Source: Zootoca vivipara
Lineage: Eukaryota
Direction of reading: 5' to 3'
NCBI RefSeq assembly: GCF_963506605.1
Contig: NC_083283.1
Span: 6,758,001 to 6,822,000, forward strand
DNA: 64,000 nt
Position 1 is the first letter of the stretch. Each line of letters starts with the position of its first letter. Both the position numbers and the translations under genes were made by a program. Below the pieces are notes generated by a model that saw nothing but the letters and a program-made list of their open reading frames with translations, was not told the DNA's origin and ran no database searches. Positions 29,440 through 56,347 of this stretch are shown here, in pieces.

Positions 29440-30400
29440 TTAAGCCATCATAACTGAGTTTTCAGTTCCAGACTTCGACTCTTCCAAAACTGAGTTTTCA
29501 GTTCTGGACACTGACTCTTCCACGCAGTCCTCCGCATCCTTGAAAATCCTCTGGAGTGCAACTTTCATGGAGACCCTGGACTGGCCCTTCTTCTGTCCCC
29601 TCCCAACTAGGAAATAGATCACCGGGTTGACACTACAATTCAGAGAGGCACACACAAAACCAACTTCCATTAGAAATATATTGTTCTCATTAAAATAGAT
29701 GGCAGTGTAAATGGCATTTAGTGGGAAAGCAAAGATGAGGAAGAAAAGAAGGGCAAGCAAAATAGTGGTGAGCAGCTTCCCACGCTGCTTCTGCTCTGAT
29801 TTGCAGCAGACTTTGAGGGCCAGTATCAGAGTGGAGGTGACCATCAGAGGAGTGCAAATGAGGGCATTTACAATAAGCTGGTACACTAAGTTAGAAGTTG
29901 GAAAGCTCTGAGTCAGTAGGAGAGTAAGGTGAGTGCCTGAGAGCAGGAAAGAGAGGGACCAAATCAGGGCACAGATAATGGTGGATAAACGTGGTGGTCG
30001 GTGGCATCGATGCCAAAGTGGGAAGAGGACAGCCACAGACCTGTCAATGCTGATGGCTGTCAGTAGAAACTGGCCTGCAGAATACGTGAAGAAAAATAGT
30101 TCAAATAATACTTTTCTGATCAAAACAGCAACATGGGATTTCTCATAGAGAGTTACAATAGGCAAAATAATACTGAGGAGAGCTGCAAGGACACCAAAGT
30201 CAGCGATGGAGAGGTTCAGGATGTAGGTGGTGAAAGGATTCCTCTTAATGTGGAAGCCCAGAAGCCGGATGACCATTCCATTCCCCAGGAAGCCAAAGAT
30301 GCAGATTATGAAAAAGGCACTGTTGGCAATGCTTTGTGCTAACTTCAAAGAAACAGCTGAGCCATCATCTGAATCACCTATTTTCTCAAAATATAGTTCC
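29440..30400 (-). CDS. MAS/MRGPR-like GPCR paralogue 1, main 7TM exon (predicted spliced protein 328 aa)
   Basis: GFLGNG, IKRNPFTTYILNLSIADF, TAISIDRS, NCSVNPVIYFLVG. The frame stays open upstream of the TTG to an acceptor (TACTGAC..CCTTTTATCTCTTCCAG, AG at 30401-30402, phase 2), with an in-frame stop just beyond it. Confidence 0.9.
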
Positions 30401-30643
30401 CTGGAAGAGATAAAAGGATCTCAGTCAGTACCCGATATGTATTAATATGGATGATGTCTAGGTTCACCTTCACTAACTCTAAAGTCAGCATGGCCCAATC
30501 AGTGATCAATCTCATCAGTAAAGAGATAATAGCACTTTCTTTTTGTCTAAATCGATACCTGAGTCGCTATGGCAGTACACCTTTTCCTGGAACCTTCAAA
30601 GTAAACTGGTAGCTTTTCCATTTTTACTACTATTGAGTAAATA

Positions 30644-31070
30644 CAGTGGAACCTCGGTTTATGAACACCTTGGTTTACAAATTTTCGGTTTACGAACGCT
30701 GTGGACCCATCTGGAACGCATTAATTCACTTTCCATTACTTTCAATGGGAAAGTTTGCTTCAGTTTATGAACACTTCGGTTTATGAACAGACTTCCGGAA
30801 CCAATTACACCCATGCTTTGGGTTAAGTACACTTCAGGTTGAGTACTCCGCAGGCCCATCTGGAACGGATTAATCCACTTTCCATTACTTTCAATGGGAA
30901 AGTTCGCTTCAGTTTATGAACGCTTCAATTTAAGTACTCCACGGACCGTCTGGAACAGATTAATCCACTTTCCATTACTTTCAATGAGAAAGTTCGCTTC
31001 AGTTTATGAACGCTTCAGTTTATGAACAGACTTCCAGAACCAATTGTGTTCATAAACCGAGGTACCACTG
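30644..31070. mobile_element. pogo/Tigger-type MITE with three internal ~90-130 bp repeats
   Basis: TIR CAGTGG(A/T)ACCTCGGTTTATGAACAC; TA TSD; empty site in the paralogous unit at ~41198. Confidence 0.88.
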
Positions 31071-31119
31071 TATTGACACAAAGTAGATGAAATGTTGAGG
31101 TTCAATAGCAAGTTAGGAA

Positions 31120-32290
31120 ATAGCTAACACTATTCAAGGCTGTATCAACAGAAGTATAGTGGCAGGATTGAGGGAAATAATAGTACCACACTATTCTGTC
31201 TTGGTCGGACCACATCTGGAATACTGTGTCCAATTCTGGGCACCCCAATTTAAGAAGGATTTTGACAGGCTGGAACATGTGCAGAGGAGGGCAACCAAGA
31301 TGATCAAGAGTCAGGAAACCAAGCCTTATGAGGAGCAGTTGAAGGTATGTTTAGCCTGAAAAAGAGGGGACTGAGAGAAGATATGAGAGCCATCTTCAAA
31401 TATCTTAAAGAAGGCATTGAGTTACAGGAGGATCTGTCCTGGAGTGTTAATACAAGGGGGCTTGTGAAGAAGGCGCAGCAGAGACTGTATTTTTTGAGAA
31501 TTTTAAGGAAAAACCATCTTCCACAAAAGCTGCTGCTTGCCTTCTATCACTGTGCCATACAGAGCATGCTCACGTACGGTTTATGTGTGTGGTACGGAAG
31601 CTGTACTTCCCAGGACAGAGCAGGGCTGTGTAGAATTATTAAAACAGCAGAGAGCATTATTGGCTGCTCACTCACCACCTTAGAACAAATTTACACCACC
31701 AGGTGCCATAGAAAAGCACTAGATATATCAAGAGATCCAACGCACCCTGGTCACCATTTCTTTCAGCTCCTGCCATCGGGACGGAGATATAGAACAATGC
31801 AGGCAAGAACGAGCCGTCTCAGGAACAGTTTCTTCTCTAGAGCAATTTTGGCCTTAAATGGAAAGCCCGGACTTTGAAGTCATCTTATTTTACTTGTTAT
31901 TTTGTAGTATAATTACTGTTTTTAATTAGCTTTTTGTAATTTTGGATTATGCGGAATGCTTTATCTGAGTGGATGTAGCAACCGAGTAATTTCGTTGTTC
32001 CCGCAAGGGGACAATGACAATAAAGATATCTTATCTTAAGGGCTATCACATGGAAGAGAATAGGACTCAAACCAATAGCTTCAAGTTGAAGGAGATTCTG
32101 ACAAAACATTCCAAAAAACTTTCTGACAGTTAGAGCTGTTCAACAGTGGAACAGACTCCCTCATGAGATTATGGACTCCCCTTCATTGGAGGCTTTTAAG
32201 CAGAGTTTGGATGGCCATCTGTCATGGATGCTTTAGCTGAGATTCCTGCATTACCGGGGGTTGGACTAGATGACCCTTGGTGTCCTTCCA
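31120..32290 (+). mobile_element. Old CR1 fragment in the intron, duplicated with the unit (also 41260-41785, 44560-45200, 51462-52130)
   Basis: [32 protein letters not shown] peptide, in whole or part, in each copy. Confidence 0.85.
31409..32031 (+). mobile_element. Rex1/Babar LINE 3' fragment inserted into CR1
   Basis: GIELQEDLSWS..KKAQQRLYFLR..HPGHHFFQLLPSGRRYR..RLRNSFF; flanked by a TATCTTAA duplication; empty site at ~41528. Confidence 0.9.
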
Positions 32291-32755
32291 AGTTGATCTT
32301 ATCACAAAATAAGGGAACTTTGAGTTCCAAAGCAAGGCAGTGTCATACCCCAACATTATCAGTTAGGAAATGATTCTCATAACAGGGAAAACATTTTTCC
32401 TAGAGGTTTTCCTGGAAAACTACAAATTCAAATACATTTCCAAATAAAGAGAAAGCACCATTTTTTCTTTAATCCAAAATTGTTGGATTATGTTAATCCA
32501 ACTGAATGAAGTGTGTTCATTTTTCGAAACAGCACAAACAATACATTAAAAAAATAACATGAAGTTATTTCTTTTGAATCGCGAAATTGCTGCAGAATTC
32601 AAAACGTGAGAAATTGAGAGAACCCAAAATGGAAATCTCCACTTATCCCTATGGAGACTATAAAAGGAAGTTATGGTCCTGTTTTAGGTGTGTGTTGAAG
32701 TTAATGTATACAGTGCTAATACTGAACAAGAAATTATTGTTTAAAATGCACTTAC

Positions 32756-32766
32756 CCCGCTAGATA
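32756..32766 (-). CDS. Predicted 11-nt coding microexon B1 (TAT CTA GCG GG; YLAG) of paralogue 1
   Basis: Branch-like CTAAT, ~50-nt AG-free pyrimidine-rich tract, AAG acceptor and GTAAGT donor; bridges phase 0 to phase 2. Confidence 0.62.
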
Positions 32767-33079
32767 CTTCATATTTTTGAAGAAGAGGATTTATGTAAGA
32801 GAAAATAAAATTACAATTAGAATCCAGTTACAGAGGCTACTTTTGGTTTAACAGATTGGTTGTTTATAGCAACTGAGCAAAGAGGTCAAGGGAAAAAAAG
32901 AATGCAAAGATACGGTATTTTAATTTTAATAAAGTGCATTGCAATTTTACAAAGCAAATATACGTACTGAATCATAGTAGATAACATTGGAGAACATTTT
33001 ATAATAGCGTGGTGCATGTATGTTGCATGAGATACTCTTACAGTGCATTCAATATGACCTTAACAGATTGTAGAACTGG

Positions 33080-33463
33080 GCCCAAACAAAATGAATTTCA
33101 ATAGGGGGACCAGTTTCAGGTTCTACACAGTTGCACATATATAAGATAAGGGAAACCTGTCTCGCCACTAGTACATGTGAAAAGGATCTAGGGGTCTTAG
33201 TAGACCAAAAGCTTCACCCGTCAGCCATGTGGTGTAGCAGGAAAAAGCTGCTTCTTTCTAGGCTGCATCAACAGACATATAGTTCCTAATCAAGGGAAGT
33301 AATACTGTAGTTCCATTCTTTTCTGCCTTGGTCAAACCACACCTGTAATACTGTGTCCAGTTCTGGGTGCCACAATTTAAGAATTATATTGAAAAGCTGG
33401 AGCCTGTTCAGGGTGTGTGTGTGACCAAGATAACTAAATAATATGATATTGGGGAGTTGTGAT

Positions 33464-33494
<31 letters not shown>

Positions 33495-33970
33495 GCTGTA
33501 ATTGTGTTGGCACTCAATTTCGTTGTACTACGTTCAATGACAATAAAGTATTTATCTTATATCTTATCTTATCATCTTATCTTATCTTATCTTATATCTT
33601 ATCATCTTATCTTCTTATCTTCTTATCTTCTTATCTTATAATCGGGGGGGGGGGGTCTGGAAACCAAGCCTTATGAGGAATTGTTGAGGGAGTTGGGCAT
33701 GTTTAGCCTGGGGCAGAGGAGACTCAGAGGAAATAGAGAGGAGAACAGAATCGTAGAACTGTAGAGTTGGATAAGACCCCATGGGTCATCTAGTGCAGCA
33801 CCCTTTAGATATTAAAGGGCTGTTACATAGAAGATGGAGCCAACTTGTTTTCTCCTGCCTTGGAGGACAGGACCTGACCCAATGGATGTTGGATGAAAAT
33901 CTACACTGCAGGTGGTAGGACCAGAAGACCGTCAGAGTCCCTTCCAACTCTACAATTCTATGATTCTATG
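33080..33970 (+). mobile_element. Second old CR1 fragment duplicated with the unit (also 43100-43895, 45870-46615, 53200-53995, 55812-56147)
   Basis: EKDLGVLVD, LVKPHL.YCVQFW and QRRLRG remnants; TTCTATGATTCTATG tail. Confidence 0.8.
33432..33637 (+). mobile_element. Rex1-type 3' UTR fragment with (TG)n and (TATCT)n tail inserted in CR1
   Basis: TTTCGTTGTAC..AATGACAATAAAG plus (TATCT)n, as at the 3' ends of the other Rex1 copies; absent at paralogous sites 43483, 46214 and 53582. Confidence 0.7.
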
Positions 33971-34277
33971 TATCTAGAATATATATATATATTTCTTTAC
34001 ACATTATCATTGAATACCTACCTGCTTAACCTTATTTGGTTTTAGGCTTTTAGAATGTTTGGGAGTGTCAATGGCTGAATTGGACAGACAACCGCTTCAT
34101 TTTCTCTTCTGCAAGCTGCTATAAGTGTCAAGCCCCACCCCAACTCATGAAAACATGCAGAGAGAAATTGCCACGATATCAGAAAGTAAGCACCTAAATC
34201 ATCATCATAGAAAAGCAAATGGGGAAGCAATTGAACAAGCAGATCTACAAAGAGAGTTTTTCTGCAAGAGTGCTTAC

Positions 34278-34292
34278 CTTGCTATAATTCAT
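34278..34292 (-). CDS. Predicted start-codon exon A2, coding part (MNYSK), paralogue 1
   Basis: ATG AAT TAT AGC AAG|GTAAGC. The ATG and donor are conserved in all six copies, and four encode an N-x-S sequon. Confidence 0.65.
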
Positions 34293-36525
34293 TATGGGAA
34301 TATCCAAAAAAATGAACTGGTCCCGCAAGAAACCCAAGCTACAGTTGTAGCTAGAACAGCTTCCAACGCATAATAAGCTAGTTAGCAAAGTAATTAAGTG
34401 GAAAACGAAAGAGGAAACTGAATCACCAGCTAATTTTGAAATGTATCCTGGTATTGTCCCAGCATCAACACAGGAAGTCGGTGTTAGAGAAAGAAGAATG
34501 GAGCTTTTAATGTTTACTGTGCTTGATGCCAGGCTGTGCTGTTGTGGTTCACCCCTTTCCTGCTTCATTTGGCCTCCGCACTGATGCACCAAATGAGGAG
34601 ACCCCCAGCGGCAGACGGGGAAGGACAGGAAGCTGTGGACAGGGCCTGCCAGAACATGCCTGGACAGAACAAGAATCCTCATGGAAGATGGCACCTGTGT
34701 TGGGGCACCTGGTTCACACCCTCTCAAAATTGTGTGCCTGGAGCCATGCCACCTCCCCACCTGGCTATAACCATTTCCTTCCTCATGGATAACAAAGTGG
34801 AGTGAGTAATCCATGGGATAGGAAGTGTTCTATCATCTCTAATCCCCCTGGCCCCCAATATGACTATGGATAACTTTTTTGATTGATTAGCCACTTGTTA
34901 CATATGACATATGTTCAGAGGCATGTAGAGGAGTGTTCATAGTGGCAAGTCCAGGTGTAGGAATTTCATCAAATTTCATCTGAAATGAACATTTGAAGAA
35001 AATGTTGGGGTAGTCCTTTCATGCAAAACATCTAAGCAATATTTTTGAGTTTTATACATCAAGTCTTAAAGATGGTGTGATGATGATGATTTTTTCTTCC
35101 TCATTTTGCTGGCAGATTGTCCCTCGGGGAAGCACCCCTCTCCTTTTTACTGACGATTCAGTTTCTGCAAGAGCTTGTGTTTTTCAAGAAGTTTCCTTGA
35201 TATGAGGTTTGTTACATATGCTTCATTATCAGCTTTCAACCGCAGGAAGTATCTCACCAGTTAATCTGCTGATTTGTGTGCATAGTTGCCATGGCCAAAT
35301 CTCTTCAAAAACTAGCATTGTGTTGTCAAGAGCATTTGTCCTGTAACTGCATGCATTTTTGGGTGTGTATCAGAGTGCAGAATCAACAATATGGTTTATT
35401 CCCCTCACTCCCAAATAGTAGATACAGTGCTACCTCTGGTCAAGAACTGAATTCGTTCCGGAGGTCCGTTCTTATCCTGAAACCGTTCTTAACATGAGGT
35501 ACCACTTTAGCTAATTGGGCCTCCTGATGCCACCGTGCTGCCGCCGTGCAATTTCTGTTCTCATCCTGAGGTAAAGTTCTTAACCCGAGGTACTACTTCC
35601 AGGTTAGTGGAGTCTGTAACCTGAAGTGTTAGTGGACAATGGCACTTGTGACATTTTTGTGTGATGATGGTGGCCCAGCCACTTGAAATTCTGCTGCTCC
35701 CTGCACTGATGTCACTTAGATATAAGCTAAAAACAGATTTTTCCATAGACTTTTGGAAATAGTTGTTAACACTCAGCAGGCCTGGGTTTGATAAAATTAC
35801 AGGATCATTCTAATCCAAGGCCTGTAGGAATTAGCAAATTTGGAATAGGTGGACTTTAGGCTACACCAACATAGCTCAACCTGGCTCTGCTCCTGGTTCA
35901 ACCAGAGGTCCACTGCAGTGTAAGATCTGACAAATCTTGCCATATAGGCTGTTAGCAACATGCAGGGTGGCCTGAAAACAGCTCGCTCCAGTGAGTGTTA
36001 GGGAGTCATTCATCCACAAACAGGGAGAAGTTTCCAGAACAGTCGTATATAAGTGGGAGAGGCACTCCGAGCATGCACAGCTTCAGTTGTAAGTGCCAAT
36101 AAAAGGAGAACTAGACGACTGACTGTTGAATGATTGTGTAAAATTGTCATTATTGTTTCACTGTACCTTTAAGAGTCAGGAAAGATCTAGTGGCTGGAGT
36201 TCTGCAGCTGTGGAGCACCTCCGCAGGTGTTGCTGTGAAGCTGATGATGCAGGGTATATCAGGGGTGTTGTGTGTTGCCTCTGTGCTGGGCGATTTCCCA
36301 GTGTGCTCTTGGTGGGTGGTTTGGTTGTGTGGGTGGTTTGTGTAAGCCTAATTTATTTTTTGATATTTTTACTTTCTCCATTAAACCAAGCATTTGTTTA
36401 AGTCTTGGTGAGACTCTATGTGTAAGTCCCTCAGCCAGCTTCTGCTGATGCAACTCAATTGCTTCTAACCCTAACATCTTGGTTATGGGCCCAGTGGTTG
36501 AGCGTGGAACTGCACATGTTATAAT

Positions 36526-36529
<4 letters not shown>

Positions 36530-36573
<44 letters not shown>

Positions 36574-37099
36574 TTATTATTTATACCCCGCCCATCTGGC
36601 CGGGTTCCCCCAGCCACTCTGGGCGGCTTCCAAAAAAACAGAAATTCTAAAATACAGAAATCCATCAAACATTAAAAGCTTCCCTAAACAGGGCTGCCTT
36701 GAGATGCCTTCTAAAGGTGTGGTAATTGTTCTCTTTGACCTCTAGTGGGAGGGCATTCCACAGGGTGGGTGCCACTACCGAGAAGGCCCTCTGCCTGGTT
36801 CCCTGTAACTTGGCTTCTCGTAATGAGGGAACCGCCAGAAGGCCCTCGGAGCTGGACCTCAGTGTCCGGGCAGAACGATGGGGGTGGAGACGCTCCTTCA
36901 GGTATACCGGACCGAGGCCGTTTAGGGCTTTAAAGGTCAACACCAACACTTTGAATTGTGCTCGGAAACGTACTGGGAGCCAATGTAGGTCTTTTAGGAC
37001 CGGTGTTATGTGATCTCGACGGCCGCTCCCAGTCACCAGTCTAGCTGCCGCATTCTGGATTAGTTGTAGTTTCCGGGTCACCTTCAAAGGTAGCCCCAC
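36530..37099 (-). mobile_element. L2 LINE 3' end inserted between the Copia PBS and gag
   Basis: KLQLIQNAAARLVTG..DHITPVLKDLHWLPVRFRAQFKVL peptide; (AAT)n tail. Confidence 0.9.
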
Positions 37100-37186
37100 A
37101 TTAGTTTTTGGAGAAAGGTTTAGAAAGGTTTTTTCCCTCTTTTCTGCTGCAACGGTTTTGTGGGCTGGTGGTTGAAAAGTTCCAGC

Positions 37187-38977
37187 ATGGCAGACCGTAT
37201 TGCTGAGGCTGAGAAGGCTTTAACATTCCCGCAACTAACGGCCGAGAACTACAGCTTATGGTCCTTTCGCATGGAAGCACTTCTGACTTCCCGTGATGTG
37301 TGGAAGTACGTGACCGAGGACCCTCCTGCTGCTCCTGTGACCGAAGCCTGGTCGAAAGGTGATGCTAAAGCAAGGGCATTAATTAACTTGGCTGTTAGTG
37401 ATCAGCAAGTTGTGTACATAAGAAATAAGAAAACTGCCAAAGAAATGTGGGACAGTCTTGCGGCAGTGCATGTTAGAAAGGAGTCAGCGTCTGCCCTAAC
37501 ATTTTTTAAACGCCTGTACCAGACAAAGCTGCAGCCTGGAGGCGACCTGGCAGCACATTTAAGACGTCTGGAGGCGATAGGCGGCGAACTAATTCAAAGA
37601 GACGTAGATATAACTGACATTCAATATGTGTTTATTATTCTTTGTTCTCTTGGTGAAGACTTTGATGCCATAGCTAGCCAGATATCTGCTGTACCTCCAG
37701 CACAATTAACTGTGGAAGGGGTAACAGCAAGATTGATGGGCGAGCTGGACAGAAGGGAGGCTTGTGGGATTAGCACTCCTATTTCTAAAAATAATGAGGA
37801 ACGCCGTATTCAAGTCTGCGGTGATTCATCTGCCTTCAAAACTTCCAAGCATTGCTGGTTTTGTAAAAAGCAGGGGCACCTTGCGAGGGACTGCAAATTT
37901 AAAAAGCAAAATGCTTCAGGGTCCGTTCCAGTTCGTAAATCACAGACAGCAACCCAGCAGTCGGCAGCACATAGTAAAGATGGACGTGAGCCGCGAGCGT
38001 TCCATGTTCGTGAATTAGGTCGTAAAGTAATTAAAGATGACACGTGGAAATCGTTTGTAGTAGATTCCGGGGCGTCAATTCATCTTTGTAATGACCGAAG
38101 TCTGTTTGTTTCTTTCGAAGAGGAAATTGGCACCATTCATCTGGCCAACTCCAACGTTCTACAGTCGCTTGGCAGAGGTACTGTGAAACTTGACTCCTTA
38201 AATATCACAATAGCAAATTGCACTTATTGCCCATCAGTGGACAATTTATTATCAGTAAGTTGCTTTGCACGCCAAGGAGTAACTGTGTGCTTCACAAAAT
38301 CACTATGTGAGTTCTACAAAGGGGGAAAGCGTGTATTGTATGCCAGAGAGTCTGAAGGTTAATATAGACTATATTTTAAAAAGCATTCACAGCCACCTGT
38401 GAACTGTAGAGTAACCCAGCCAAGGCAAGGGTTGAGAAAAAGGCAGGGGCTGAGAAATGTAAAGCCTCACTCCGGATGTATTCATGAGGCGCATAGACTT
38501 TTGGGACATTTAAATTTCACAGATGTGATAAAGACAGAGAAGATTGTTGATGGACTAAACTTGAAGCCATGTAAATGCTATATGCATTGTGTATCTTGTT
38601 GTAAGAATAAGATTAAGGTTGCAAGAAAGGGTAAATGCTCAGGCAGGAAAGTAACAGAGCCATTTGAACGTGTGCATTGTGATTTAGTAGGGCCACTCCC
38701 TCCTTCTTTAGGAAATTCAAAATATTGGCTTACTCTTATTGATCAGTACAGCAGATATTGTTTTGTTTACACCATTGCTGAAAAGTCACAAGCACTTGAG
38801 AAGTACAAGATTTTTTGCAACTGGGTAAAAACCCACTTTAACAAACCTATAAAGCATTTATTTTCTGACAGAGGAGGAGAATTTATTTCTGAGGATTTTT
38901 CACATTTCCTGGAAGCGCAGGGGACTGCTCACGAGTTGTCCTGCCCTAGAAGTCCTTGGCAGAATGGGATTGTAGAA
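37187..38977 (+). pseudogene. Copia gag-pol reading frame with one in-frame stop (38360-38362), truncated in the integrase core
   Basis: ORFs 37160-38362 and 38399-39031 share a frame; EG*YRL corresponds to the usual GLYxL motif. Confidence 0.85.
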
Positions 38978-39505
38978 CCACTGCTGGTTCATGACTGCCA
39001 ATTGACTGTGTCTGCCTCCACCACTGCTTAAAAGAAAGAAGGGCTGAAACTTAAGTATGCCATTACAGCTATTGCTATAATGATTGTAAATAATGATACC
39101 ATGACAAGTTTATGAGCAGTCAAGCAATAAATCACTTGACTGAGTGTTACGGCATCTGTGTTTCTTCTCAAAGTGTAGCTTCAATTGCTGACTACTGCTT
39201 CTCAGAAACTCTGCTAAATGGATGGAAGCGGCTAACAAGTTGGCTACCCACAAGTACACCCATGGAGTGAAAATGTGATGGACTGTGACTTTTCAATAGT
39301 GAGTTAGTGTGTGCTGTTCAGAAAGGACTGGAGTCAGATGCAAAGTACAATGAAATTGAAAGATTTATTTAAATTGCAGCTGAGAAATGATTAAGATAAA
39401 ACTCTGTGATATAAGAATGAAAAGAATACATAAATGAAATGCAAGTGAGCATTGGAGAAATGAAAAAGAACAACAGATAAACAAAAAAGAACAATATAAG
39501 ATGCA

Positions 39506-39556
<51 letters not shown>

Positions 39557-40040: not shown

Positions 40041-40956
40041 TTAAGTTGCTATCATAACCAAGTTTTCAGTTTTGGATACCGATTCTTCCTCATCCTTGAA
40101 AATCCTCTGGAGTGCAACTTTCATGGAGACCCTGGACTGGCCCTTCTTCTGCCTCCTCCCTACTAGGAAATAGATCACCGGGTTGACACTACAATTCAGA
40201 GAGGCACACACAAAGCCAACTTCCAATAGAATCATATTGTTCTCATTAAAATAGATGGCAGTGTAAATGGCATTTAGTGGGAAGGCAAAGATGAGGAAGA
40301 AAAGAAGGGTAAGCAAAATAGTGGTGAGCAGCTTCCCACGCTGCTTCTGATCTGATTTGCAGCAGACTTTGAGAGTCAGTATCAGAGTGGAGGTGATCAT
40401 CAGAGGAGTGCAAATGAGGGCATTTACAATAAGCTGGTACACTAAGTTAGAGTTTGGAAAGCTCTGAGTCAGTAGGAGAGTAAGGTGAATGCCTGAGAGC
40501 AGGAAAGAGAGGGACCAAATCAGGGCACAGATAATGGTGGATAAACGTGGTGGTCGGTGGCATCGATGCCAAAGTGGGAAGAGGACAGCCACAGACCTGT
40601 CGATGCTGATGGCTGTCAGTAGAAACTGGCCCGCAGAATACGTGAAGAAAAATAGTTCAAATAATACTTTTCTGATCAAAACAGCAACATGGGATTTCTC
40701 ATAGAGAGTTACAATAGGCAAAATAATACTGAGGAGAGCTGCAAGGACACCAAAGTCAGCGATGGAGAGGTTCAGGATGTAGGTGGTGAAAGGATTCCTC
40801 TTAATGTGGAAGCCCAGAAGCCGGATGACCATTCCATTCCCCAGGAAGCCAAAGATGCAGATGATGATAATTATGCTGTTGGCAATGCTTTGTGCTAACT
40901 TCAAAAAAACAGTTGAGCCATCATCTGAATCACCTTTTTTCTTAAAATCTAGTTCC
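40041..40956 (-). CDS. MAS/MRGPR-like GPCR paralogue 2, main 7TM exon (predicted 348 aa long form)
   Basis: Near-identical to paralogue 1; acceptor TCTCTTCCAG at 40957-40958, phase 2; N-terminal ELDFKKKGDSDDG. Confidence 0.9.
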
Positions 40957-42317: not shown

Positions 42318-42328
42318 CACGCTATATA
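42318..42328 (-). CDS. Predicted 11-nt microexon B2 (TAT ATA GCG TG; YIAW)
   Basis: Same flanks as B1: AG-free tract, ATGAAG| ... |GTAAGT. Confidence 0.6.
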
Positions 42329-44193: not shown

Positions 44194-44278
44194 CGGGCTA
44201 CCATTCATTTTGGGAATATCCAAAAAAGAAACAGCTGAGCCATCATCTGAATCAGCTATTTTCTCAAAATATAGTTCC
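44194..44278 (-). CDS. Predicted 85-nt chimeric exon (7TM-exon 5' end fused to ATG-exon 3' end): ELYFEKIADSDDGSAVSFLDIPKMNGSP
   Basis: Acceptor TCTCTTCCAG (44279-44280), donor CCG|GTAAGC (44192-44193); 1+84 nt, no stop. Confidence 0.6.
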
Positions 44279-44723: not shown

Positions 44724-44732
44724 ACTGCCGTA

Positions 44733-45533: not shown

Positions 45534-45553
45534 CCCATTAGTCCAGTTATAGG
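45534..45553 (-). CDS. Predicted 20-nt microexon B3 (CCT ATA ACT GGA CTA ATG GG; PITGLMG)
   Basis: Same flanks as the other B copies; 9 nt longer, so the phase is preserved. Confidence 0.6.
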
Positions 45554-47104: not shown

Positions 47105-47119
47105 CGTGCTATCATTCAT
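47105..47119 (-). CDS. Predicted start-codon exon A4, coding part (MNDST), paralogue 2
   Basis: ATG AAT GAT AGC ACG|GTAAGC. Confidence 0.62.
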
Positions 47120-48119
47120 TATGGGAATATCCAAAAAATAATGAACTGGTCCCCCAAGAAATCAAGCTACAGTTGTAGCTAGAACAGCCTCCAATGCATA
47201 ATAAGCTAGTTAGCAAAGTAATTAAGTGGAAAACGAAAGAGGAAACTGAATCACCAGCTAATCTTGAAATACATTTTGTATTTTGTATTGAAATACAGGA
47301 AGTCGGTGTTAGAGAAAGAAGAATGGAGCTTTTAATGTTTACTGTGCTTGATGCCAGGCTGTGCTGTTGTGGTTCACCCCTTTCCCGCCTCACTTGGCCT
47401 CCGCACTGATGCACCAAATGAGGAGACCCCTGGAGGGAGGGACAGGAAGCTGTGGACAGGGCCTGCCAGAACATGCCTGGGCAGAACAGGGATCCTCATG
47501 GAAGATGGCAGCTGTGCTGGGGCACCTGGTTCACACCCTCTCAAAATTGTGTGCCCCACCTGGGTATAACCTTTCCTTCCTCATGGATAACAAAGTGGAG
47601 TGAGTAACCCATGGGATAGGAAATGGTCTTTCATCTCTAATCCCCCTGGCCCCCAATATGACTATGGATAACTTGTTTGATTGATTAGCTACTTGTTACG
47701 TATGACATATGTTCAGAGGCATGTAGAGGAGTGTTCATAGTGGCAAGTCCAGGTGTAAGAATTTCATCAAATTTCATCTGAAATGAACATTTGAAGAAAA
47801 TGTTGGGGTAGTCCTTTCATGCAAAACATCTAAGCAATAATTGAATTTCATACATCAAGTCTTAAAGATGGTGTGATGCTGTTGATTTTTTCTTTTGCAA
47901 AGGTTCTACCTCATTTTGCTGACAGATTTTCCCTCGGGGAAGCTCCCCTCTCCTTTTTACTGAAGATTCAGTTTCTGCAAGAGCTTGTGTTTTTCAAGAA
48001 GTTTCCTTGATAAGAATTTTGTTACATATGCTTCATTATCAGCTTTCAACCGCAGGAAGTATCTCACCAGTTAATCTGCTGATTTGTGTGCATAGTTGCC
48101 ATGACCACATCTCCTCAAA

Positions 48120-49135: not shown

Positions 49136-50502
49136 TGGGTATGGTATACTTACAGCATCATTCTAATCCAAGGCCTGTAGGAATTAGCAAATTTCGAATA
49201 GGTGGACTTTAGTTTACACCAACATAGCTCAACCTGGCTTGGCTCCTGGTTCAACCAGAGGTCCACTGCAGTGTAAGATCTGACAAATCTTGCCATATAG
49301 GCTGTTAGCAATATGCAGGGTGGCCTGAAAACAGCTTGCTCCAGTGAGTGTTAGGGAGTCATTCATCCACAAACAGGGAGAAGATTCCAGAACAGTCGTA
49401 TATAAGTGGGAGAGTCACTCCGAGCATGCACAGCTTCAGCTGGAAGTGCCAATAAAAGGAGAACTAGATGACTGACCACTGCTGGTTCATGACCTGCCAA
49501 TAGACTGTGTCTGCCTCCATCATTGCTTAAAAGAAAGAAGGGCTGAAACTTAAGTATTCCATTACAGCTATTGCTATAATGATTGTAAATAATGATACCA
49601 TGACCAGTCAAGCAATAAATCACTTGTCTGAGTGTTACGGCATATGTGTTTCTTCTCAAAGTGTAGCTTCTATTGCTGACTACTGCTTCTCAGAAAATCT
49701 GCTAAATGGATGGAAGCGGCTAACAAGTTGCCTACCCACAAGTACACCCATGGAGTGACAATGTGATGGACTGTGACTTTTCAATAGTGAGTTAGTGTGT
49801 GCTGTTCAGAAAGGACTGGAGTCAGATGCAAAGTACAATGAAATTGAAAGATTTATTTAAATTGCAGCTGAGAAATGATTAAGATAAAACTCTGTGATAT
49901 AAGAATGAAAAGAATACATAAATGAAATGCAAGTGAGCAATGGAGAAATGAAAAAGAACAACAGAGAAACAAAAAAGAACAATATAAGATGCATATAATT
50001 ATTATTATTATTATTAATCCATTGTGTCTTCAATTAGTATACCACCCTATATCTTTAGATATCAGGGCTGTTCTCAGCCACTGCAGTCAGCGTGAGCAAG
50101 GGACTGTGGTCATGGATGTGGCTATGCCAATCCATCATGTCCCACTGCTGTCTAACTTGGAGTTGTGTTCTTTGTCCAGTCTACTTGTGTGCTTTCTTAA
50201 ATGCTGAGACGTCAATCAACATTATGGCATGGGGAGGTGGTGGGGAGAGAATCTTTAGCCCAACCCTTCTAAAAATATAGGGGTGAAGAAGGCTACGCTC
50301 AAGTAGACCTTCTGTCCAAAGCCCATCTCCACAGTCTTGCTCAATCCAAAGCAAATGTTACAATACAAAACTCCTAGTTTGAATTTCCTATGTTGGACAA
50401 TAGATAGAAAGGCATTAAAATAAGTCATTCACACCACAGACTACACTCTGTACATTATTGTGCTTATGATAATAAAGAATTGGTTAGTCCTGCCTTAAGG
50501 CA

Positions 50503-51427
50503 TTAAGTTGCTATCATAACCAAGTTTTCAGTTTTGGATGCCGATTCTTCCTCATCCTGGAAAATCCTCTGGAGTGCAACTTTCATGGAGACCGTGGACT
50601 GGCACTTCTTCTGCCTCCTCCCTACTAGGAAATAGATCACCGGGTTGACACTACTATTCAGAGAGGCACACACAAAGCCAACTTCCAATAGAATCATATT
50701 GTTCTCATTAAAATAGATGGCAGTGTAAATGGCATTTAGTGGGAAGGCAAAGATGAGGAAGAAAAGAAGGGTAAGCAAAATAGTGGTGAGCAGCTTCCCA
50801 CGCTGCTTCTGCACTGATTTGCAGCAGACTTTGAGGGTCAGTATCAGAGTGGAGGTGACCATCAGAGGAGTGCAAATGAGGGCATTTACAATAAGCTGGT
50901 ACACTAAGTTAGAGTTTGGAAAGCTCTGAGTCAGTAGGAGAGTAAGGTGAATGCCTGAGAGCAGGAAAGAGAGGGACCAAATCAGGGAACAGATAATGGT
51001 GGATAAACGTGGTGGTCGGTGGCATCGATGCCAAAGTGGGAAGAGGACAGCCACAGACCTGTCGATGCTGATGGCTGTCAGTAGAAACTGGCCCGCAGAA
51101 TACGTGAAGAAAAATAGTTCAAATAATACTTTTCTGATCAAAACAGCAACATGGGATTTCTCATAGAGAGTTACAATAGGCAAAATAATACTGAGGAGAG
51201 CTGCAAGGACACCAAAGTCAGCAATGGAGAGGTTCAGGATGTAGGTGGTGAAAGGATTCCTCTTAATGTGGAAGCCCAGAAGCCGGATGACCATTCCATT
51301 CCCCAGGAAGCCAAAGATGCAGATGATGATAAAGGCACTGTTGGCAATGCTTTGTGCTAACTTCAAAGAAACAGCTGAGCCATCATCTGAAACTCCAGAA
51401 TAGCGAGTTGGATTTTCATACTCTATC
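50503..51427 (-). CDS. MAS/MRGPR-like GPCR paralogue 3, main 7TM exon (predicted 361 aa long form)
   Basis: Near-identical 7TM; acceptor TCTCTTCCAG at 51428-51429, phase 2; N-terminal IEYENPTRYSGVSDDG. Confidence 0.9.
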
Positions 51428-51755
51428 CTGGAAGAGATTACAGAACATTATGTATAAACAGAGGAGGGCAACCAAGATGATCAAGAGTCAGGAAACCAAG
51501 CCTTATGAGGAGCAGTTGAAGGTATGTTTAGCCTGAAAAAGAGGAGACTGAGAGAAGATATGATAGCCATCTTCAAATATCTTAAGGGCTGTCACATGGA
51601 AATGAATAGGACTCAAACCAATAGCTTCAAGTTGAAGGAGATTCTGATGAAACATTCCAAAAAACTTTCTGACAGTTAGAGCCGTTCAACAGTGGAACAG
51701 ACTCCCTCATGAGATTATGGACTCCCAATCATTGGAGGCTTTTAAGCAGAGGTTG

Positions 51756-52041
51756 CTCCCTGGAAGGACAGATCGTGAAGTTGAAGCTGAGGCTCCAATA
51801 CTTTGGCCACCTCATGAGAAGAGAAGAATCCTTGGAAAAGACCCTGATGTTGGGAAAGATTGAGGGCACTAGGAGAAGGGGACGACAGAGGACAAGATGG
51901 TTGGACAGTGTTCTCGAAGCTACGAACATGAGTTTGACCAAACTACGGGAGGCAGTGCAAGACAGGAGTGCCTGGCGTGCTATGGTCCATGGGGTCACGA
52001 AGAGTCAGACACGACTAAACGACTAAACAACAACAACAACA
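51756..52041 (+). mobile_element. RTE-BovB LINE 3' end inserted in CR1
   Basis: LQYFGHLMRREESLEKTLMLGKIEGTRRRGRQRTRWLD; (CAA)n tail; 12-bp TSD AAGCAGAGGTTG. Confidence 0.93.
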
Positions 52042-52876
52042 AAGCAGAGGTTGGATGGCCATCTGTCATGGATGCTTTAGCTGAGATTCCTGCATTACCG
52101 GGGGTTGGACTAGATGACCCTTGGGGTCCTTCCAAGTTGATCTTATCACAAAATAAGGGAACTTTGAGTTTCAAAGCAAGGCAGTATCATACACCAACAT
52201 TATCAGTTAGGAAATGATTCTCATAACAGGGAAAACCTTTTTCCTAGAGGTTTTCCTGGAAAACTACAAATTCAAAGACATTTCCAAGTAAAGAGAAAGC
52301 ACCATTTTTTTTCTTTAATCCAAAATTGTTGAATTATGAATCTAAATGAATGATCAAGTTAATCCAATTTAATGTTGCAATGATGCTTTTCATAATTGCA
52401 GAACTAGTCATTGGGGGAGTGGGATTTGAATCTCCTTGCATTTTACTTAGACATTACCTAATTTAAACTTCCTGAACCAATATGCAAACAACAACATTTT
52501 CTTTGAAATTCATATTTACCCACATTTTTGGATGAAGTTCTCCAACTAAAGTGTTTACAAAAAAATGCATGTATTTTGGGAATATGCTTGTAAAAGTGTG
52601 TTCATTCTTCAGCACAAATGATACATTTTTTAAAAAGAATGTCACACTAACAGATTTTTACATATTACATGAAGTTATTTCTTTTTAATCCAAATTGTTG
52701 CAGAAATGTAGAGAATTCAAAACCTGAGAAATTGAGAGAACCCAAAATGGAAATCTCCACCTATCCCTATGGAGACTATAAAATGAAGTTATGGTCCTGT
52801 TTTAATCACATATGCTGTGTGTTGAAGTTAATGTATATAGTGCTGAACATGAAATTATTTTTTAAAATGCACTTAC

Positions 52877-52887
52877 CACAGTCGAGT
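52877..52887 (-). CDS. Predicted 11-nt microexon B4 (ACT CGA CTG TG; TRLW)
   Basis: Same flanks as the other B copies. Confidence 0.6.
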
Positions 52888-54297
52888 CTTCATTTTTTTT
52901 AAAGAGGATTTATGTAAGAGAAAATAAAATTACAATTAGAATCCAGTTACAGAGGCTACTTTTGGTTTCACAGATTAGTTGTTTATAGCAACTGAGCAAC
53001 TGAGCAACTGAGCAAAGAGGTCAAGGAAAAGAAAGAATGCAAAAATATGGAAGTTTAATTTTAATAAAGTACATTGCAATTTTACAAACCAAATATATGT
53101 ACTGAATCAAAGTATATAACATTGGAGAACATTTTATAATAGCGTGGTGCATGTATGTTGCATGAGATACTCTTACAGTGCATTCAATATGACCTTAACA
53201 GATTGTAGAACTGGGCCCAAACAAAATGAATTTCAATAGGGATCAGTTTCAGGTCTACACTTAGGCAGGAAAAAACCAGTTGCACATATATAAGATAAGG
53301 GAAACCTGTCTCACCACTAGTACATGAGAAAAGGATCTAGGGGTCTTAGTAGACCAAAAGCTTCACACGTCAGCCATGTGGTACAGCAGGAAAAAGCTAC
53401 TTCTTTCTAGGCTGCATCAACAGACATATAGTTCCTAATCAAGGGAAGTAATATTGTAGTTCTATTCTTTTCTGCCTTGGTCAAACCACACCTGGAATAC
53501 TGTGTCCAGTTCTGGGTGCCACAATTTAAGAATTATATTGAAAAGCTGGAGCCTGTTCAGGGTGTGTGTGTGACCAAGATAATCGGGGGTCGGGAAACCA
53601 AGCCTTATGAGGAATTGTTGAGGGAGTTGGGCATGTTTAGCCAGGGGCAGAGGAGAATCAGAGGAGATAGAGAGGAGAACAGAATTGTAGAACTGTAGAG
53701 TTGGATGAGACCCCAAGGGTCATCTAGTGCAGCACCCTTTAGATATTAAAGGGCTGTTACATGGAAGATGGAGCCAACTTGTTTTCTTCTGCCTCGGAGG
53801 ACAGGACCTGACCCAATGGATTCAAGTTGCAAGAAAGGAGATTCCAAATAACTATCAGGAACAACTTTCTGACAAGAAGAGCTGTTTAACCTTGACATTT
53901 TTAAAGCAGAGGTTGGATGAAAATCTACACTGCAGGTGGTAGGACCAGAAGACCCTCAGAGTCCCTTCCAACTCTACAATTCTATGATTCTATGTATCTA
54001 CAATATATATATTTCTTTACACATTATCCTTGAATACTTACCTGCTTACCCTTATTTGGTTTTAGGCTTTTAGAATGTTTGGGAGTGTCAGTGGCTGAAT
54101 TGGACAGTCAACCTCTCCATTTTCTCTTCTACAAGCTGCTATAAGTGTCAAGCCCTACCCTAACTCATGAAAACATGCAGAGAGAAATTGCCACGATATC
54201 AGAAATTAAGCACCTAAATCACCATCATATAAAAGCAAATGGGGAAGCAATTGAACAAGCAGATCTACAAAGAGAGTTTTTCTGCAAGAGTGCTTAC

Positions 54298-54418
54298 CGT
54301 GCTATCATTCATTATGGGAAAAAAGGCACTGTTGACAATGCTTTGTGGTAACTTCAAAGAAACAGTTGAGCCATCATCAGAATCTCCAGAATAGTGATTT
54401 TGATTGCCATACTCTAGC
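54298..54418 (-). CDS. Predicted 121-nt chimeric exon: LEYGNQNHYSGDSDDGSTVSLKLPQSIVNSAFFPIMNDST
   Basis: Acceptor TGTCTCCTCCAG (54419-54420), donor ACG|GTAAGC (54296-54297); 1+120 nt open, consistent with ORF-track 54265-54456. Confidence 0.6.
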
Positions 54419-54780
54419 CTGGAGGAGACAACAGGATATCTTTTCTGGATATACACTAACTATAGGATATCATCAAAAGTCAGGATTATCCAATTGCGAA
54501 AAGATAATGTGATTTTCTTCTTGTCTAGTTCAACACTTGTGTAGCTAAGGTACTACACAGTTTTCGCAAGTCTTCAAAATAAGCTGGTTGGTAGCTTTTA
54601 ATTTTATTATTTTTTTAAAAAAAATATTTTTAATGGTTTTCTTTTCACATAAGACATATTCAATGTCATCATTTAACATCCATTTTCTAGTTTCCCCTCC
54701 TCTTTGACTTCCCCCAACTTCCATTTCTGGTTTATTACTCCAAATGTTACATTCTGCTGTTTATACATAATGTTCTGTTA

Positions 54781-54989
54781 TCAAAACAAAATAAAAAAAA
54801 TTCTTTCCAATAGCACCTTAGAGACCAACTAAGTTTGTTGCTGGTATGAGCTTTCGTGTGCATGCACACTGCACACGATAGGTCATACCAACAATAAACT
54901 TTGTTGGTCTCTAAGGTGCTACTGGAAGGAATTATTTTTTATTTTGTTTTGACTACAGCAGACCAACACGGCTACCTGCCTGTAACTAG
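54781..54989. mobile_element. Penelope-like inverted terminal-repeat insertion (hammerhead cores deleted at the centre)
   Basis: Inverted arms meeting at GTGTGCATGCACAC-T-GCACAC; flanking duplication GTTCTGTTAT. Confidence 0.8.
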
Positions 54990-55408
54990 TTCTGTTATGA
55001 CTAATTGTATTTCCTGTTCTCTGTAAATAAAGTTGAAAATATTGATTTCATAGAATCATAGAGTTGGAAGAGACCACAATGGCCATCCTTTCTAACCCCC
55101 TGCCAAGCGGGAAACACCATCAAAGCATTCCTAACAGATGGCTGTCAGGAATTTAAATCCTGCCAATAGCTTTTCAATTTTTGAAACAACTAAACTGATA
55201 TCTTATCACAAAATAAGGGAAGTTTGAGTTTCAAAGCAAGGCAGTATCATATCCCAACATTATCAGTTAGGAAATGATTCTCATAACAGGGAAAACATTT
55301 TTCCTAGAGGTTTTCCTGGAAAACTAAAAATTATTCTTAGGTGTGTGTTGAAGTTAATGTATACAGTGCTAATACTGAACAAGAAATTATTGTTTAAAAT
55401 GCACTTAC

Positions 55409-55419
55409 CTCGTTATATA
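55409..55419 (-). CDS. Predicted 11-nt microexon B5 (TAT ATA ACG AG; YITR)
   Basis: Same flanks as the other B copies. Confidence 0.6.
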
Positions 55420-56329
55420 CTTCATTTTTTTGAAGAAGAAGAGGATTTATGTAAGAGAAAATAAAATCACAATTAGAATCCAGTTACAGAGGCTACTTTT
55501 GGTTTAACAGATTAGTTGCTTATAGCAACTGAGCAAAGAGGTCAAGGAAAAGAAAGAATGCAGAAATACGGTATTTTAATTTTAATAAAGTGCATTGCAA
55601 TTTTACAAACCAAATATACGTACTGAATCAAAGTAGATAACATTGGAGAACATTTTATAATAGCGTGGTGCATGTATGTTGCATGAGATACTCTTACAGT
55701 GCATTCAACATGACCGTAACAGATTGTAGAACTGGACCCAAACAAAATGAATTTCAATAGGGGGACCAGTTTCAGTATTCATCTTATATCTTATATCTTA
55801 TCATCTTATCTTATAATCGGGGGTCTGGAAACCAAGCCTTATGAGGAATTGTTGAGGGAGTTGGGCATGTTTAGCGTGGGACAGAGGAGACTCAGAGGAG
55901 ATAGAGAGGAGAACAGAATCGTAGAGCTGTAGAGTTGGATGAGACCCCAAGGGTCATCTAGTGCAGCACCTTTTAGATTTTAAGGGCTGTTACCTGGAAG
56001 ATGGAGCCAACTTGTTTTCTCCTGCCTTGGAGGACAGGACCTGACCCAATGGATTCAAGTTGCAAGACAGGAGATTCCAAATAAATATCAGGAAGAACTT
56101 TCTGACAAGAAGAGCTGTTTAACCTTGGCGTTTTTTAAGCAGAGGTTGTTTGGTAGTGGAAATAGCTGAAACATTAAACATCTTAAATTCAATCTCAAGC
56201 CTCATCCTAACTCATGAAAGCAAGCAGAGAGAAATTGCCACAGTATCAGCAAACAGACACCTAAATCATCATCATGTAAAAGCAAATGGGGAAGCAATTA
56301 AAAGGGAGCTTTGGTTTAAGAGTGCTTAC

Positions 56330-56347
56330 CTCGTAATAATCCATCAT
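56330..56347 (-). CDS. Predicted start-codon exon A6, coding part (MMDYYE), paralogue 3
   Basis: ATG ATG GAT TAT TAC GAG|GTAAGC; a diverged copy of exon A that still ends in phase 0. Confidence 0.55.

What the first reader, a model, noticed from the sequence alone, without database searches (positions are those of the whole stretch)
29440..56347. Modular, phase-compatible N-terminal exon cassette that could combinatorially diversify near-identical MRGPR-like receptors
Seen: the three 7TM exons have no in-frame ATG before TM1, and all begin at a phase-2 acceptor (30400, 40956, 51427). Upstream lie ATG exons ending in phase 0 (34278, 47105, 56330), five microexons of 11, 11, 20, 11 and 11 nt (all 2 mod 3), and two phase-2-to-0 chimeric exons. 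Spliced in order they give stop-free proteins: MNYSK-YLAG-ELYFEKIGDSDDG.. (328 aa); MNDST-PITGLMG-ELYFEKIADSDDGSAVSFLDIPKMNGSP-YIAW-ELDFKKKG.. (348 aa); and MMDYYE-YITR-LEYGNQNHYSG..PIMNDST-TRLW-IEYENPTRYSG.. (361 aa). Known: mammalian MAS1/MRGPR coding sequences lie essentially in one exon. Inference: any A-B-(chimera-B)-7TM path keeps the frame, so alternative splicing could put many ectodomains on an almost invariant 7TM core. I do not know of a description of this architecture, but I cannot search the literature.
Basis: partly seen in the sequence, partly recalled or inferred. Interest (0 to 1): 0.9.

Follow-up and report, generated by a model that had tools for sequence, protein, structure and literature searches.

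The report
Lizard MRGPR genes with coding microexons
Three neighbouring itch/immune-type receptor genes of the common lizard build their outer tip from a tiny start exon and an 11-letter microexon. Two of them also carry the in-frame stump of a deleted neighbour gene, but nothing shows the pieces are mixed and matched by splicing.

Summary
The window is Zootoca vivipara, because RefSeq XP_060134168.1 maps to it at 100% identity. It carries three minus-strand MRGPRH-like/Mas-like 7TM exons. None has an ATG before TM1, and each opens at a strong phase-2 acceptor.

All 13 proposed exons, their phases and their stop-free translations check out exon by exon. This differs from RefSeq's 5' end for that gene.

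The five microexons are paralogues with almost invariant intron flanks and a hypervariable body. The two chimeric exons are scars of two separate deletions. Each deletion joined the stump of an upstream paralogue to the start exon of the next gene.

Phase compatibility is therefore inherited, and only in-frame fusions survived. It is not evidence of a combinatorial system. At most three in-frame paths exist per fused gene, and none but full inclusion was seen. Gene 2's upstream exons remain untested.

7TM cores group by species while N-terminal types are shared across genera, which points to concerted evolution of the core. Interest is moderate.

The parts
29440..30400 (-). Gene 1 7TM exon (T1). 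Acceptor at 30400 in phase 2, stop at 29442-29440.
   Evidence: Pfam 7tm_1 E=2e-20. RefSeq XP_060133570.1.
32756..32766 (-). Gene 1 microexon B1, 11 nt (Y-L-A-Gg).
   Evidence: It is part of RefSeq P0121, MNYSK|YLAG|ELYFEK.
34278..34292 (-). Coding part of gene 1 start exon A1 (MNYSK, with an N-glycosylation sequon). Donor AAG|GTAAGC. The 5'UTR part extends further upstream.
   Evidence: RefSeq P0121.
40041..40956 (-). Gene 2 7TM exon (T2).
   Evidence: RefSeq XP_060134167.1. A gene-2-like RNA contig of 1402 nt at depth 25.7 in run X1.
42318..42328 (-). Gene 2 microexon B2b, 11 nt (Y-I-A-Wtg).
   Evidence: The donor is used in RefSeq P0124, MKYIAW|ELDFKKK. The acceptor at 42328 is inferred from the paralogues.
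44194..44278 (-). Chimeric exon C2, 85 nt. The first ~51 nt of a 7TM exon are joined to the last ~34 nt of an A exon (..GSAVS|FLDIPKMNGSP).
   Evidence: Its use in mRNA was not tested.
45534..45553 (-). Microexon B2a, 20 nt (an 11-nt type with a 9-nt in-frame insertion). It belongs to the relic upstream unit of gene 2.
   Evidence: Its use in mRNA was not tested.
47105..47119 (-). Coding part of start exon A2 (MNDST), in the relic upstream unit of gene 2.
   Evidence: Its upstream region is 91% identical to that of A1 over 918 nt.
50503..51427 (-). Gene 3 7TM exon (T3).
   Evidence: RNA contig X15 record 8 is spliced at 51427.
52877..52887 (-). Gene 3 microexon B3b, 11 nt (T-R-L-Wtg).
   Evidence: RefSeq P0003 ..MNDST|TRLW|IEYEN. 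X15 record 14 has 11 letters beyond 54298.
54298..54418 (-). Chimeric exon C3, 121 nt. The first ~100 nt of a 7TM exon are joined to the last ~21 nt of an A exon (..NSAFF|PIMNDST).
   Evidence: X1 record 7 and X15 record 14 begin and end exactly at 54298 and 54418. The donor is also used in RefSeq P0003.
55409..55419 (-). Microexon B3a, 11 nt (Y-I-T-Rag), in the relic upstream unit of gene 3.
   Evidence: X1 record 7 is 214 nt, which equals 121 + 11 + 82..
56330..56490 (-). Exon A3, 161 nt. Its acceptor is ccag|atct at 56490, the first ATG is at 56359 (MDYPMMDYYE) and the donor is GAG|GTAAGC.
   Evidence: X15 record 15 covers 56330-56491 with 29 foreign letters on each side. Sequence.

Best explanation
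This is a tandem array of three MRGPRH-like (Mas-related) class A GPCR genes of Zootoca vivipara. Their coding sequence is split into three parts:
- an ATG exon giving 5-10 residues;
- an obligatory 11-nt microexon that shifts the frame by 2;
- one large exon holding the rest of the N-terminus, all seven helices and the tail.

Skipping the microexon runs into a stop within four to five codons of the 7TM exon. Its inclusion is therefore required to make any receptor.

The array once had at least five such units. Two separate microhomology-type deletions each removed the body of a 7TM exon, the intergenic DNA and the next unit's promoter. Each deletion welded the first 50-100 nt of the upstream 7TM exon to the next unit's ATG exon just 5' of its ATG. 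The downstream receptors (genes 2 and 3) now depend on the upstream unit's promoter. They are made with a 40-55-residue longer N-terminus that repeats the N-terminal module.

Shown here: the anatomy, the paralogy of the units, and the spliced chain for gene 3.
Inferred: the same chain for gene 2; use of the first AUG as start codon; deletion rather than internal duplication.

The N-terminal coding pieces evolve much faster than the introns around them. The 7TM cores are homogenised within species by gene conversion. Together these two processes give variable tips on a nearly constant core. The modularity therefore arose at the DNA level over evolutionary time. No RNA-level combinatorial splicing has been shown.
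For: Identity and family:
- P0003 maps at 100% to the window.
- The best hits are lacertid MRGPRH-like/Mas-like receptors, and Pfam 7tm_1 matches.

Gene models:
- P0124 and P0003 use the B2b and B3b donors and the C3 donor.

RNA:
- X1 record 7 (214 nt) = 54298-54418 + 11 letters + 56330-56411.
- X15 records 15, 14 and 8 chain A3, B3a, C3, B3b and T3 with 30-nt overlaps.
- Intron bins have zero depth, so these runs are RNA.

Paralogy:
- The five half-units align through their introns at 88-98%.
- All five B exons share ATGAAG|...|GTAAGTGCATTT.

Fast-evolving exon body:
- 7 of 11 exon columns vary, against 14 of 142 flank columns (p=8e-5).
- Pairwise difference is 0.39 against 0.096 in introns.

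Deletion scars:
- Homology to T exons ends, and homology to A exons starts, within 2-4 nt in T-runs.
- The breakpoints differ between C2 and C3.
- The promoter-side homology seen upstream of A1 and A2 is absent upstream of C2 and C3.

Concerted evolution:
- In the 7TM-core tree the three Zootoca genes form a clade (95/93) and all Podarcis paralogues group together.
- The AU test rejects grouping by N-terminal type (p=1.5e-4 and 4.5e-3).
- Yet the ELYFE-, IEY/IEN- and RLW-type N-termini are shared by Zootoca, Lacerta and Podarcis.
Against: - Gene 2's upstream chain (A2 > B2a > C2 > B2b) has no transcript evidence. RefSeq instead starts gene 2 at the ATG just 5' of B2b.
- RefSeq's gene 3 model uses another first exon (57947-57911) and another acceptor (~54459). 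A minor isoform of that kind is not excluded.
- The letters of the 9-11-nt inserts in the contigs were not printed, so microexon identity rests on exact length arithmetic.
- Contig depths are low (2-6).
- Which AUG is used is unknown. The internal ATG in C3 has the better -3 purine.
- The groups for the AU test were named after the tree was seen.
- The orthologous exon borders in other lacertids come from protein models only.
Confidence: 0.72

Rival explanations
1. The A, B and chimeric exons form a cassette that is used combinatorially by regulated alternative splicing, within or between genes. One nearly invariant 7TM core would then be displayed with many different ectodomains.
For: - Every A-B-(C-B)-T path keeps the frame.
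- Three in-frame paths exist per fused gene.
- In Podarcis muralis two annotation sets give one identical 7TM part (307 aa) two different A/B pairs: P0130 against P0131.
- Contigs break at exon junctions. That could reflect branching, but low depth explains it as well.
Against: - Only the all-inclusive chain was seen.
- Each unit ends in its own 7TM exon with a stop, so there is no shared constant exon.
- Splicing between genes would have to run through terminal exons and 5-10 kb of intergenic DNA that includes a copia-like element.
- Phase compatibility is fully explained by paralogy.
- The number of possible products is small (three per fused gene), not 'many'.
Confidence: 0.12
2. The relic exons (A2, B2a, C2; A3, B3a, C3) act only as 5'UTR. 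The receptors of genes 2 and 3 start at the ATG kept inside C2 and C3 (MNGSP.., MNDST..), giving ordinary short N-termini. On this reading the open frame upstream is a coincidence.
For: - The internal ATGs keep the ancestral start context (ccataATGA, with a purine at -3). The A3 ATG has T at -3.
- The chance that both fusions are in frame is only about 1 in 9, which is not negligible.
- The short products would match the orthologous Lacerta model MKNVS|VRLW|IEY...
Against: - By scanning, the first AUG in the A3 exon is in frame and stop-free through to the receptor, so the long form should be made.
- B2a carries a 9-nt insertion that keeps the frame.
- RefSeq also reads C3 as coding.
Confidence: 0.2
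3. Genes 2 and 3 are decaying fusion pseudogenes. Their open frames and splice sites persist only because the deletions are recent.
For: - The promoters of the downstream units are gone.
- A further relic A exon, with a stop, lies at 20538-20547.
- Raw RNA runs X19 and X20 are almost silent here.
Against: - Both 7TM ORFs are intact.
- Gene-2-like and gene 3 transcripts are present and correctly spliced in X1 and X15.
- The halves of each fused gene differ by 5-12% in their introns, so they are not very young, yet there are no stops in any of the 10 exons concerned.
Confidence: 0.06

Closest known systems
Mammalian MAS1/MRGPR family (MRGPRX, A-H)
   Same: Both are class A GPCRs of the same family by sequence. 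Both form tandem, lineage-specific expansions. A locally duplicated sauropsid MRGPR group is recorded in PMC6504862. Fast evolution of extracellular parts is known for primate and rodent MRGs from my own background knowledge; I did not check it here.
   Different: The mammalian coding sequence lies in one exon (background knowledge). Here the start codon and the next 8-13 residues lie in two extra coding exons, one of only 11 nt. Other MRGPR-like ORFs in the same window (for example 11663-12649) do keep a single-exon ORF with its own ATG.
Split olfactory receptor genes (Barnes et al. 2020, PMC7055050)
   Same: Both are chemoreceptor-type GPCRs long thought to be intronless. The initiation Met lies in an upstream exon and the intron falls in the N-terminal domain. 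Some loci there give isoforms with variable N-termini, and one is a fusion of two former 'pseudogenes' into one split gene.
   Different: Split ORs have two coding exons and no microexon. Here there are three to five N-terminal coding exons, an obligatory 11-nt exon, and fusion exons made by deletion between paralogues.
Chemokine receptor genes with a short first coding exon and N-terminal splice variants (CXCR4, CXCR3-A/B)
   Same: A few N-terminal residues are encoded on a separate exon, and alternative 5' exons can lengthen the ectodomain. This rests on background knowledge and was not tested here.
   Different: It is a different GPCR family. There is no microexon and no tandem relic modules.
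Clustered variable-exon loci (protocadherin alpha/gamma, UGT1A)
   Same: Both are tandem arrays of similar 5' units in one orientation.
   Different: Those loci splice many variable first exons to shared constant exons. Here each unit has its own terminal 7TM exon and no constant exon is shared, so the defining feature is absent.

Membership tests
MAS-related GPCR (MRGPR) family, class A | Rhodopsin-type 7TM domain | tested here: met
   Pfam 7tm_1 E=2e-20 over residues 39-262 of the T1 translation.
MAS-related GPCR (MRGPR) family, class A | Closest relatives are MRGPR/MAS proteins | tested here: met
   There are 627 hits. The top ones are lacertid 'MRGPR member H-like' and 'proto-oncogene Mas-like' at 84-92% identity. 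These names come from automated annotation.
MAS-related GPCR (MRGPR) family, class A | Coding sequence in one exon (the mammalian rule) | tested here: not met
   There is no ATG before TM1. The start codon lies 3.9 kb upstream and an 11-nt exon lies in between. This is a typical feature of the family rather than a defining one.
MAS-related GPCR (MRGPR) family, class A | Expression in sensory neurons or mast/immune cells, and peptide or small-molecule agonists | not testable with these tools
   Run tissues are coded. Chicken MRGPRH is induced in macrophages by endotoxin (PMC3091694), which is only a lead.
Split-CDS chemoreceptor genes (as defined for ORs in PMC7055050) | Initiation Met in an upstream exon, intron inside the N-terminal domain, RNA support for the junction | tested here: met
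   RefSeq models and spliced contigs for gene 3.
Split-CDS chemoreceptor genes (as defined for ORs in PMC7055050) | Start codon and splice junction conserved in orthologues | tested here: inconclusive
   Lacerta and Podarcis protein models fit A|B|T with B of 11, 26, 32 and 53 nt.
Coding microexon | Exon of 30 nt or less, with canonical splice sites, included in mRNA | tested here: met
   The exons are 11 nt with AG|..|GTAAGT borders. Inclusion of B3a and B3b follows from exact contig lengths. B1, B2b and B3b are in RefSeq.
Clustered variable-exon system (protocadherin/UGT1A type) | Several variable 5' exons spliced alternatively to shared constant exons | tested here: not met
   Each unit ends in its own 7TM exon with a stop. 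Only linear inclusion was seen.

The most novel reading that the evidence does not exclude
The 11-nt microexon may be a regulated on/off gate, since skipping it gives a stop within five codons. In the fused genes, regulated in-frame skipping of the relic module (A-B-T against A-B-C-B-T), or leaky scanning to the internal ATG, could give two to three ectodomain variants per receptor in a tissue- or state-specific way. The hypervariable microexon body would then be under diversifying selection for ligand or pathogen recognition. That would make this a splicing-gated, fast-evolving sensory or immune receptor array in squamates.
Probability: 0.15. Interest if true: 0.65.

Novelty: new variant of a known kind. 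Interest (0 to 1): 0.4.

Why it matters
- **Gene structure.** MRGPRs are treated as single-coding-exon genes. Here a squamate subfamily needs an 11-nt coding microexon to make any protein. Exon-blind searches would therefore call these genes pseudogenes or truncate them, and RefSeq's own models for genes 2 and 3 differ from the RNA.
- **Evolution.** The locus shows a small, clear case of how tandem receptor arrays evolve. Deletions between paralogues produced in-frame fusion exons and promoter capture. Gene conversion keeps the 7TM core uniform. An 11-nt exon diverges about four times faster than the introns beside it.
- **Function.** If the long and short N-termini differ in ligand response, this would give a natural handle on what the MRGPR N-terminus does.

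Tried and rejected
- **The look-up of encoding contigs.** Orthologous loci of Lacerta and Podarcis, and Logan transcript contigs for genes 1 and 2, could not be fetched.
  - The raw RNA runs X19 and X20 are almost silent at these exons.
  - The joints table was filled by transposon-derived reads at 51600-52200, 53830-54000 and 54650-55200. The junction evidence therefore comes from the contig pieces in table 8.
- **Reason for contig breaks.** I could not tell whether contigs break at exon junctions because of alternative isoforms or because of low depth.
- **Joined spliced models.** Exons were translated one by one and compared with proteins returned by the search tools.
- **Chance AG...GT matches for the microexons.** Rejected because of paralogous conservation.
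- **Intragenic tandem duplication as the origin of the chimeric exons.** Considered less likely than deletion. The two halves carry different, old N-terminal types that are shared with other genera.
- **Literature.** Five searches found no description of squamate MRGPR exon structure.
- **The search of earlier findings.** A search by words gave nothing.

Full report
**What is there**

The window is from Zootoca vivipara. RefSeq protein XP_060134168.1 (P0003) maps to it at 100% identity over 361 residues.

Three ORFs on the minus strand (29440-30348, 40041-40904, 50503-51366) match Pfam 7tm_1. Their best relatives are lacertid 'MRGPR member H-like' and 'proto-oncogene Mas-like' proteins at 84-92% identity.

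Each ORF continues upstream to a strong acceptor, tctcttccag|G, at 30400, 40956 and 51427. None has a Met before the GNGMVIR motif inside TM1.

**The proposed exons**

All 13 exons have the stated borders, lengths, phases and stop-free translations. The residue counts add up to 328, 348 and 361 aa.

- The A exons end in AAG/ACG/GAG|GTAAGC.
- All five microexons sit in the same context...ATGAAG|exon|GTAAGTGCATTT. That pattern occurs exactly five times in the window, against none expected.
- Without a B exon, the 7TM exon is read in a frame that stops after four to five codons. This can be read off the sequences. The microexon is therefore obligatory.

**Independent gene models**

Cluster look-ups returned the RefSeq models of this very locus.

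- **Gene 1.**
- **Gene 2.** XP_060134167.1 (310 aa) is MKYIAW|ELDFKKK. It uses the B2b donor but starts at the ATG of the conserved ATGAAG just 5' of the microexon. It ignores A2, B2a and C2.
- **Gene 3.** XP_060134168.1 (377 aa) uses the C3 donor at 54298 and microexon B3b. It takes a different acceptor (~54459) and a different first exon (57947-57911).

Lacerta and Podarcis models fit the same A|B|T plan, with B segments equivalent to 11, 26, 32 and 53 nt. Those borders are inferred from proteins only.

**RNA evidence**

Runs X1 and X15 are Logan contigs of organism A. They are evidently RNA, because intron bins have zero depth and the contigs are spliced.

- X1 record 7 is 214 nt long: 54298-54420, then 9 letters, then 56330-56411. 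The microexon ends in AG, like the intron, so the first piece over-extends by 2 nt. The true sum is 121 + 11 + 82 = 214.
- X15 record 14 (144 nt) is 11 + 121 + 11 + 1 letters.
- X15 record 15 covers 56330-56491 with 29 foreign letters on each side.
- X15 record 8 joins the 7TM exon at 51427 to 29-30 upstream letters.

These X15 contigs overlap by 30 letters and chain A3, B3a, C3, B3b and T3.

The A3 exon itself has an acceptor at 56490 (ccag|atct), so a non-coding exon lies further upstream.

A 1402-nt gene-2-like 7TM contig at depth 25.7 shows that gene 2 or a close allele is expressed in X1. Its upstream exons were not covered.

There are caveats. Depths are low. The letters of the inserts were not printed. 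The raw RNA runs X19 and X20 are nearly silent here.

**Origin of the cassette**

The five half-units (A to the first part of T) are homologous through their introns at 88-98%.

In C2 and C3, homology to a 7TM exon's 5' end stops, and homology to an A exon starts, within a few bases inside T-runs. The junctions lie about 19 nt (C2) and 8 nt (C3) before the ATG, so the two breakpoints differ. The promoter-side homology present upstream of A1 and A2 is missing upstream of C2 and C3.

The simplest reading is two separate deletions between neighbouring paralogues. Each removed a 7TM body, the spacer and the next promoter.

I rate an intragenic tandem duplication as less likely. The two halves of gene 3 carry different old N-terminal types: MDYPMMDYYE/YITR/LEYGNQ against MNDST/TRLW/IEYENP. 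The second type matches Lacerta MKNVS|VRLW|IEYPN and Podarcis ..TRLW|IEYEKP.

Phase compatibility is thus inherited from one ancestral unit. An out-of-frame fusion would have put an upstream ATG out of frame with the receptor, so only in-frame fusions remain as intact genes. The chance of two in-frame fusions is about 1 in 9.

**Two further results**

- **Hypervariable microexon.** The body of the microexon is the most variable stretch of the unit. 7 of 11 columns vary, against 14 of 142 in the flanking 160 nt (Fisher p=8e-5). Mean pairwise difference is 0.39, against 0.096 in introns, and no 11-column intron window reaches that value. The A exon codons and the first 48 nt of the 7TM exon are also about twice as variable as introns. 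This pattern speaks for selection on the encoded N-terminus.
- **Concerted evolution of the core.** A tree of the 255-residue 7TM core groups the three Zootoca genes together (95/93) and all Podarcis paralogues together. An AU test rejects grouping by N-terminal type (p=1.5e-4 and 4.5e-3). The groups were named after the tree was seen. N-terminal types, and long against short C-terminal tails, occur in all combinations across genera. The 'invariant core with variable tips' is therefore best explained by gene conversion of the core, plus old or selected N-terminal exons. It is a DNA-level mosaic.

**The combinatorial-splicing idea**

Nothing observed supports it, and nothing excludes a limited form. 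Per fused gene only three in-frame paths exist: A-B-C-B-T, A-Ba-T and A-Bb-T. Initiation at the internal ATG would add a possible fourth product.

There is no shared constant exon. Inter-genic splicing would have to pass terminal exons and, between genes 1 and 2, a copia-like retroelement.

One weak lead is that P. muralis P0130 (RefSeq) and P0131 (Ensembl/UniProt) are identical over 307 aa from IENEE... onward but carry different A/B parts. These are predictions, not transcripts.

**Comparison with what is known**

Five literature searches found no description of squamate MRGPR exon structure. PMC6504862 only notes a locally duplicated sauropsid MRGPR group.

The closest described analogue is the split olfactory receptor genes. 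There the Met lies in an upstream exon, the intron falls in the N-terminal domain, and some loci have variable N-terminal isoforms (PMC7055050).

Other MRGPR-like ORFs in the same window keep a single-exon ORF with its own ATG. The split N-terminus is therefore a feature of this subfamily.

**Verdict**

The architecture is real, but RefSeq has already captured it in part. The chimeric exons are real, and C3 is in mRNA. The combinatorial function is unsupported. I file this as a new variant of a known kind, of moderate interest.

Noticed in passing
window 11663-12649 (-), 4994-6022 (+), 17700-18350 (+): There are three more MRGPR-like 7tm_1 ORFs, about 35-45% identical to the array genes. The one at 11663-12649 is a complete 328-aa single-exon ORF with its own ATG. 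The one at 17700-18350 is truncated after about TM4. Classical and split gene structures therefore coexist in one cluster.
   Followed up: partly
window 20538-20547 (-), also 6898-6910 (-): A further A-type start exon relic reads ATGGATTAAG|GTAAGCACTCTT. It has an in-frame stop, conserved upstream 5'UTR-like sequence and no B exon downstream. A second donor-like match with one mismatch lies at 6898-6910. Both are probably remains of lost units of the array.
   Followed up: partly
window 37160-39031 (+): Copia-type LTR retroelement ORFs (Retrotran_gag_2, Pol_BBD, rve integrase) lie between the gene 1 start exon and the gene 2 3' end.
   Followed up: partly
window 23903-25135 (+) and 31347-31877 (+): A reverse-transcriptase ORF (RVT_1, LINE-like) lies at 23903-25135. 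An unscanned ORF at 31347-31877 (its repeat origin is my guess) sits inside the B1-T1 intron of gene 1.
   Followed up: no
window 51600-52200, 53830-54000, 54650-55200: These intron segments of gene 3 have very high RNA depth (up to about 1e5 summed contig depth), many variants, loose ends and strand-switch joints. They behave as copies of abundantly transcribed repeats, not as part of the gene.
   Followed up: no
window 56490 (-) and upstream; 57911-57949 (-): The A3 exon has an acceptor at 56490, and RNA contigs carry 29-30 letters of an unplaced upstream exon. RefSeq's first exon for gene 3 (ATGATGGTGACTGTGGTG..CAG|gtgtgg at 57949-57911) is a candidate, but this was not shown.
   Followed up: no
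P0122 (XP_034980342.1), an older RefSeq model of this locus: This 500-aa model fuses part of the gene 2 7TM exon to the gene 1 7TM exon. It was replaced in the later annotation and looks like a read-through artefact of near-identical paralogues.
   Followed up: no
P0130 vs P0131 (Podarcis muralis): Two models are identical over 307 aa from the start of the 7TM exon but have different A/B-encoded N-termini: MGDCE|TSENCSGLGLG against MGYSMMDDYE|EKNISRRLW. This hints that Podarcis also has two A-B sets upstream of one 7TM exon.
   Followed up: partly
window 56330-56359 (-): The A3-type N-terminus MDYPMMDYYE, which is MDYPMMDDYE in Podarcis, lacks the N-glycosylation sequon of the MNxS-type A exons. 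It has tyrosines flanked by acidic residues, which looks like a tyrosine-sulfation-type motif. This is speculation from the sequence only.
   Followed up: no
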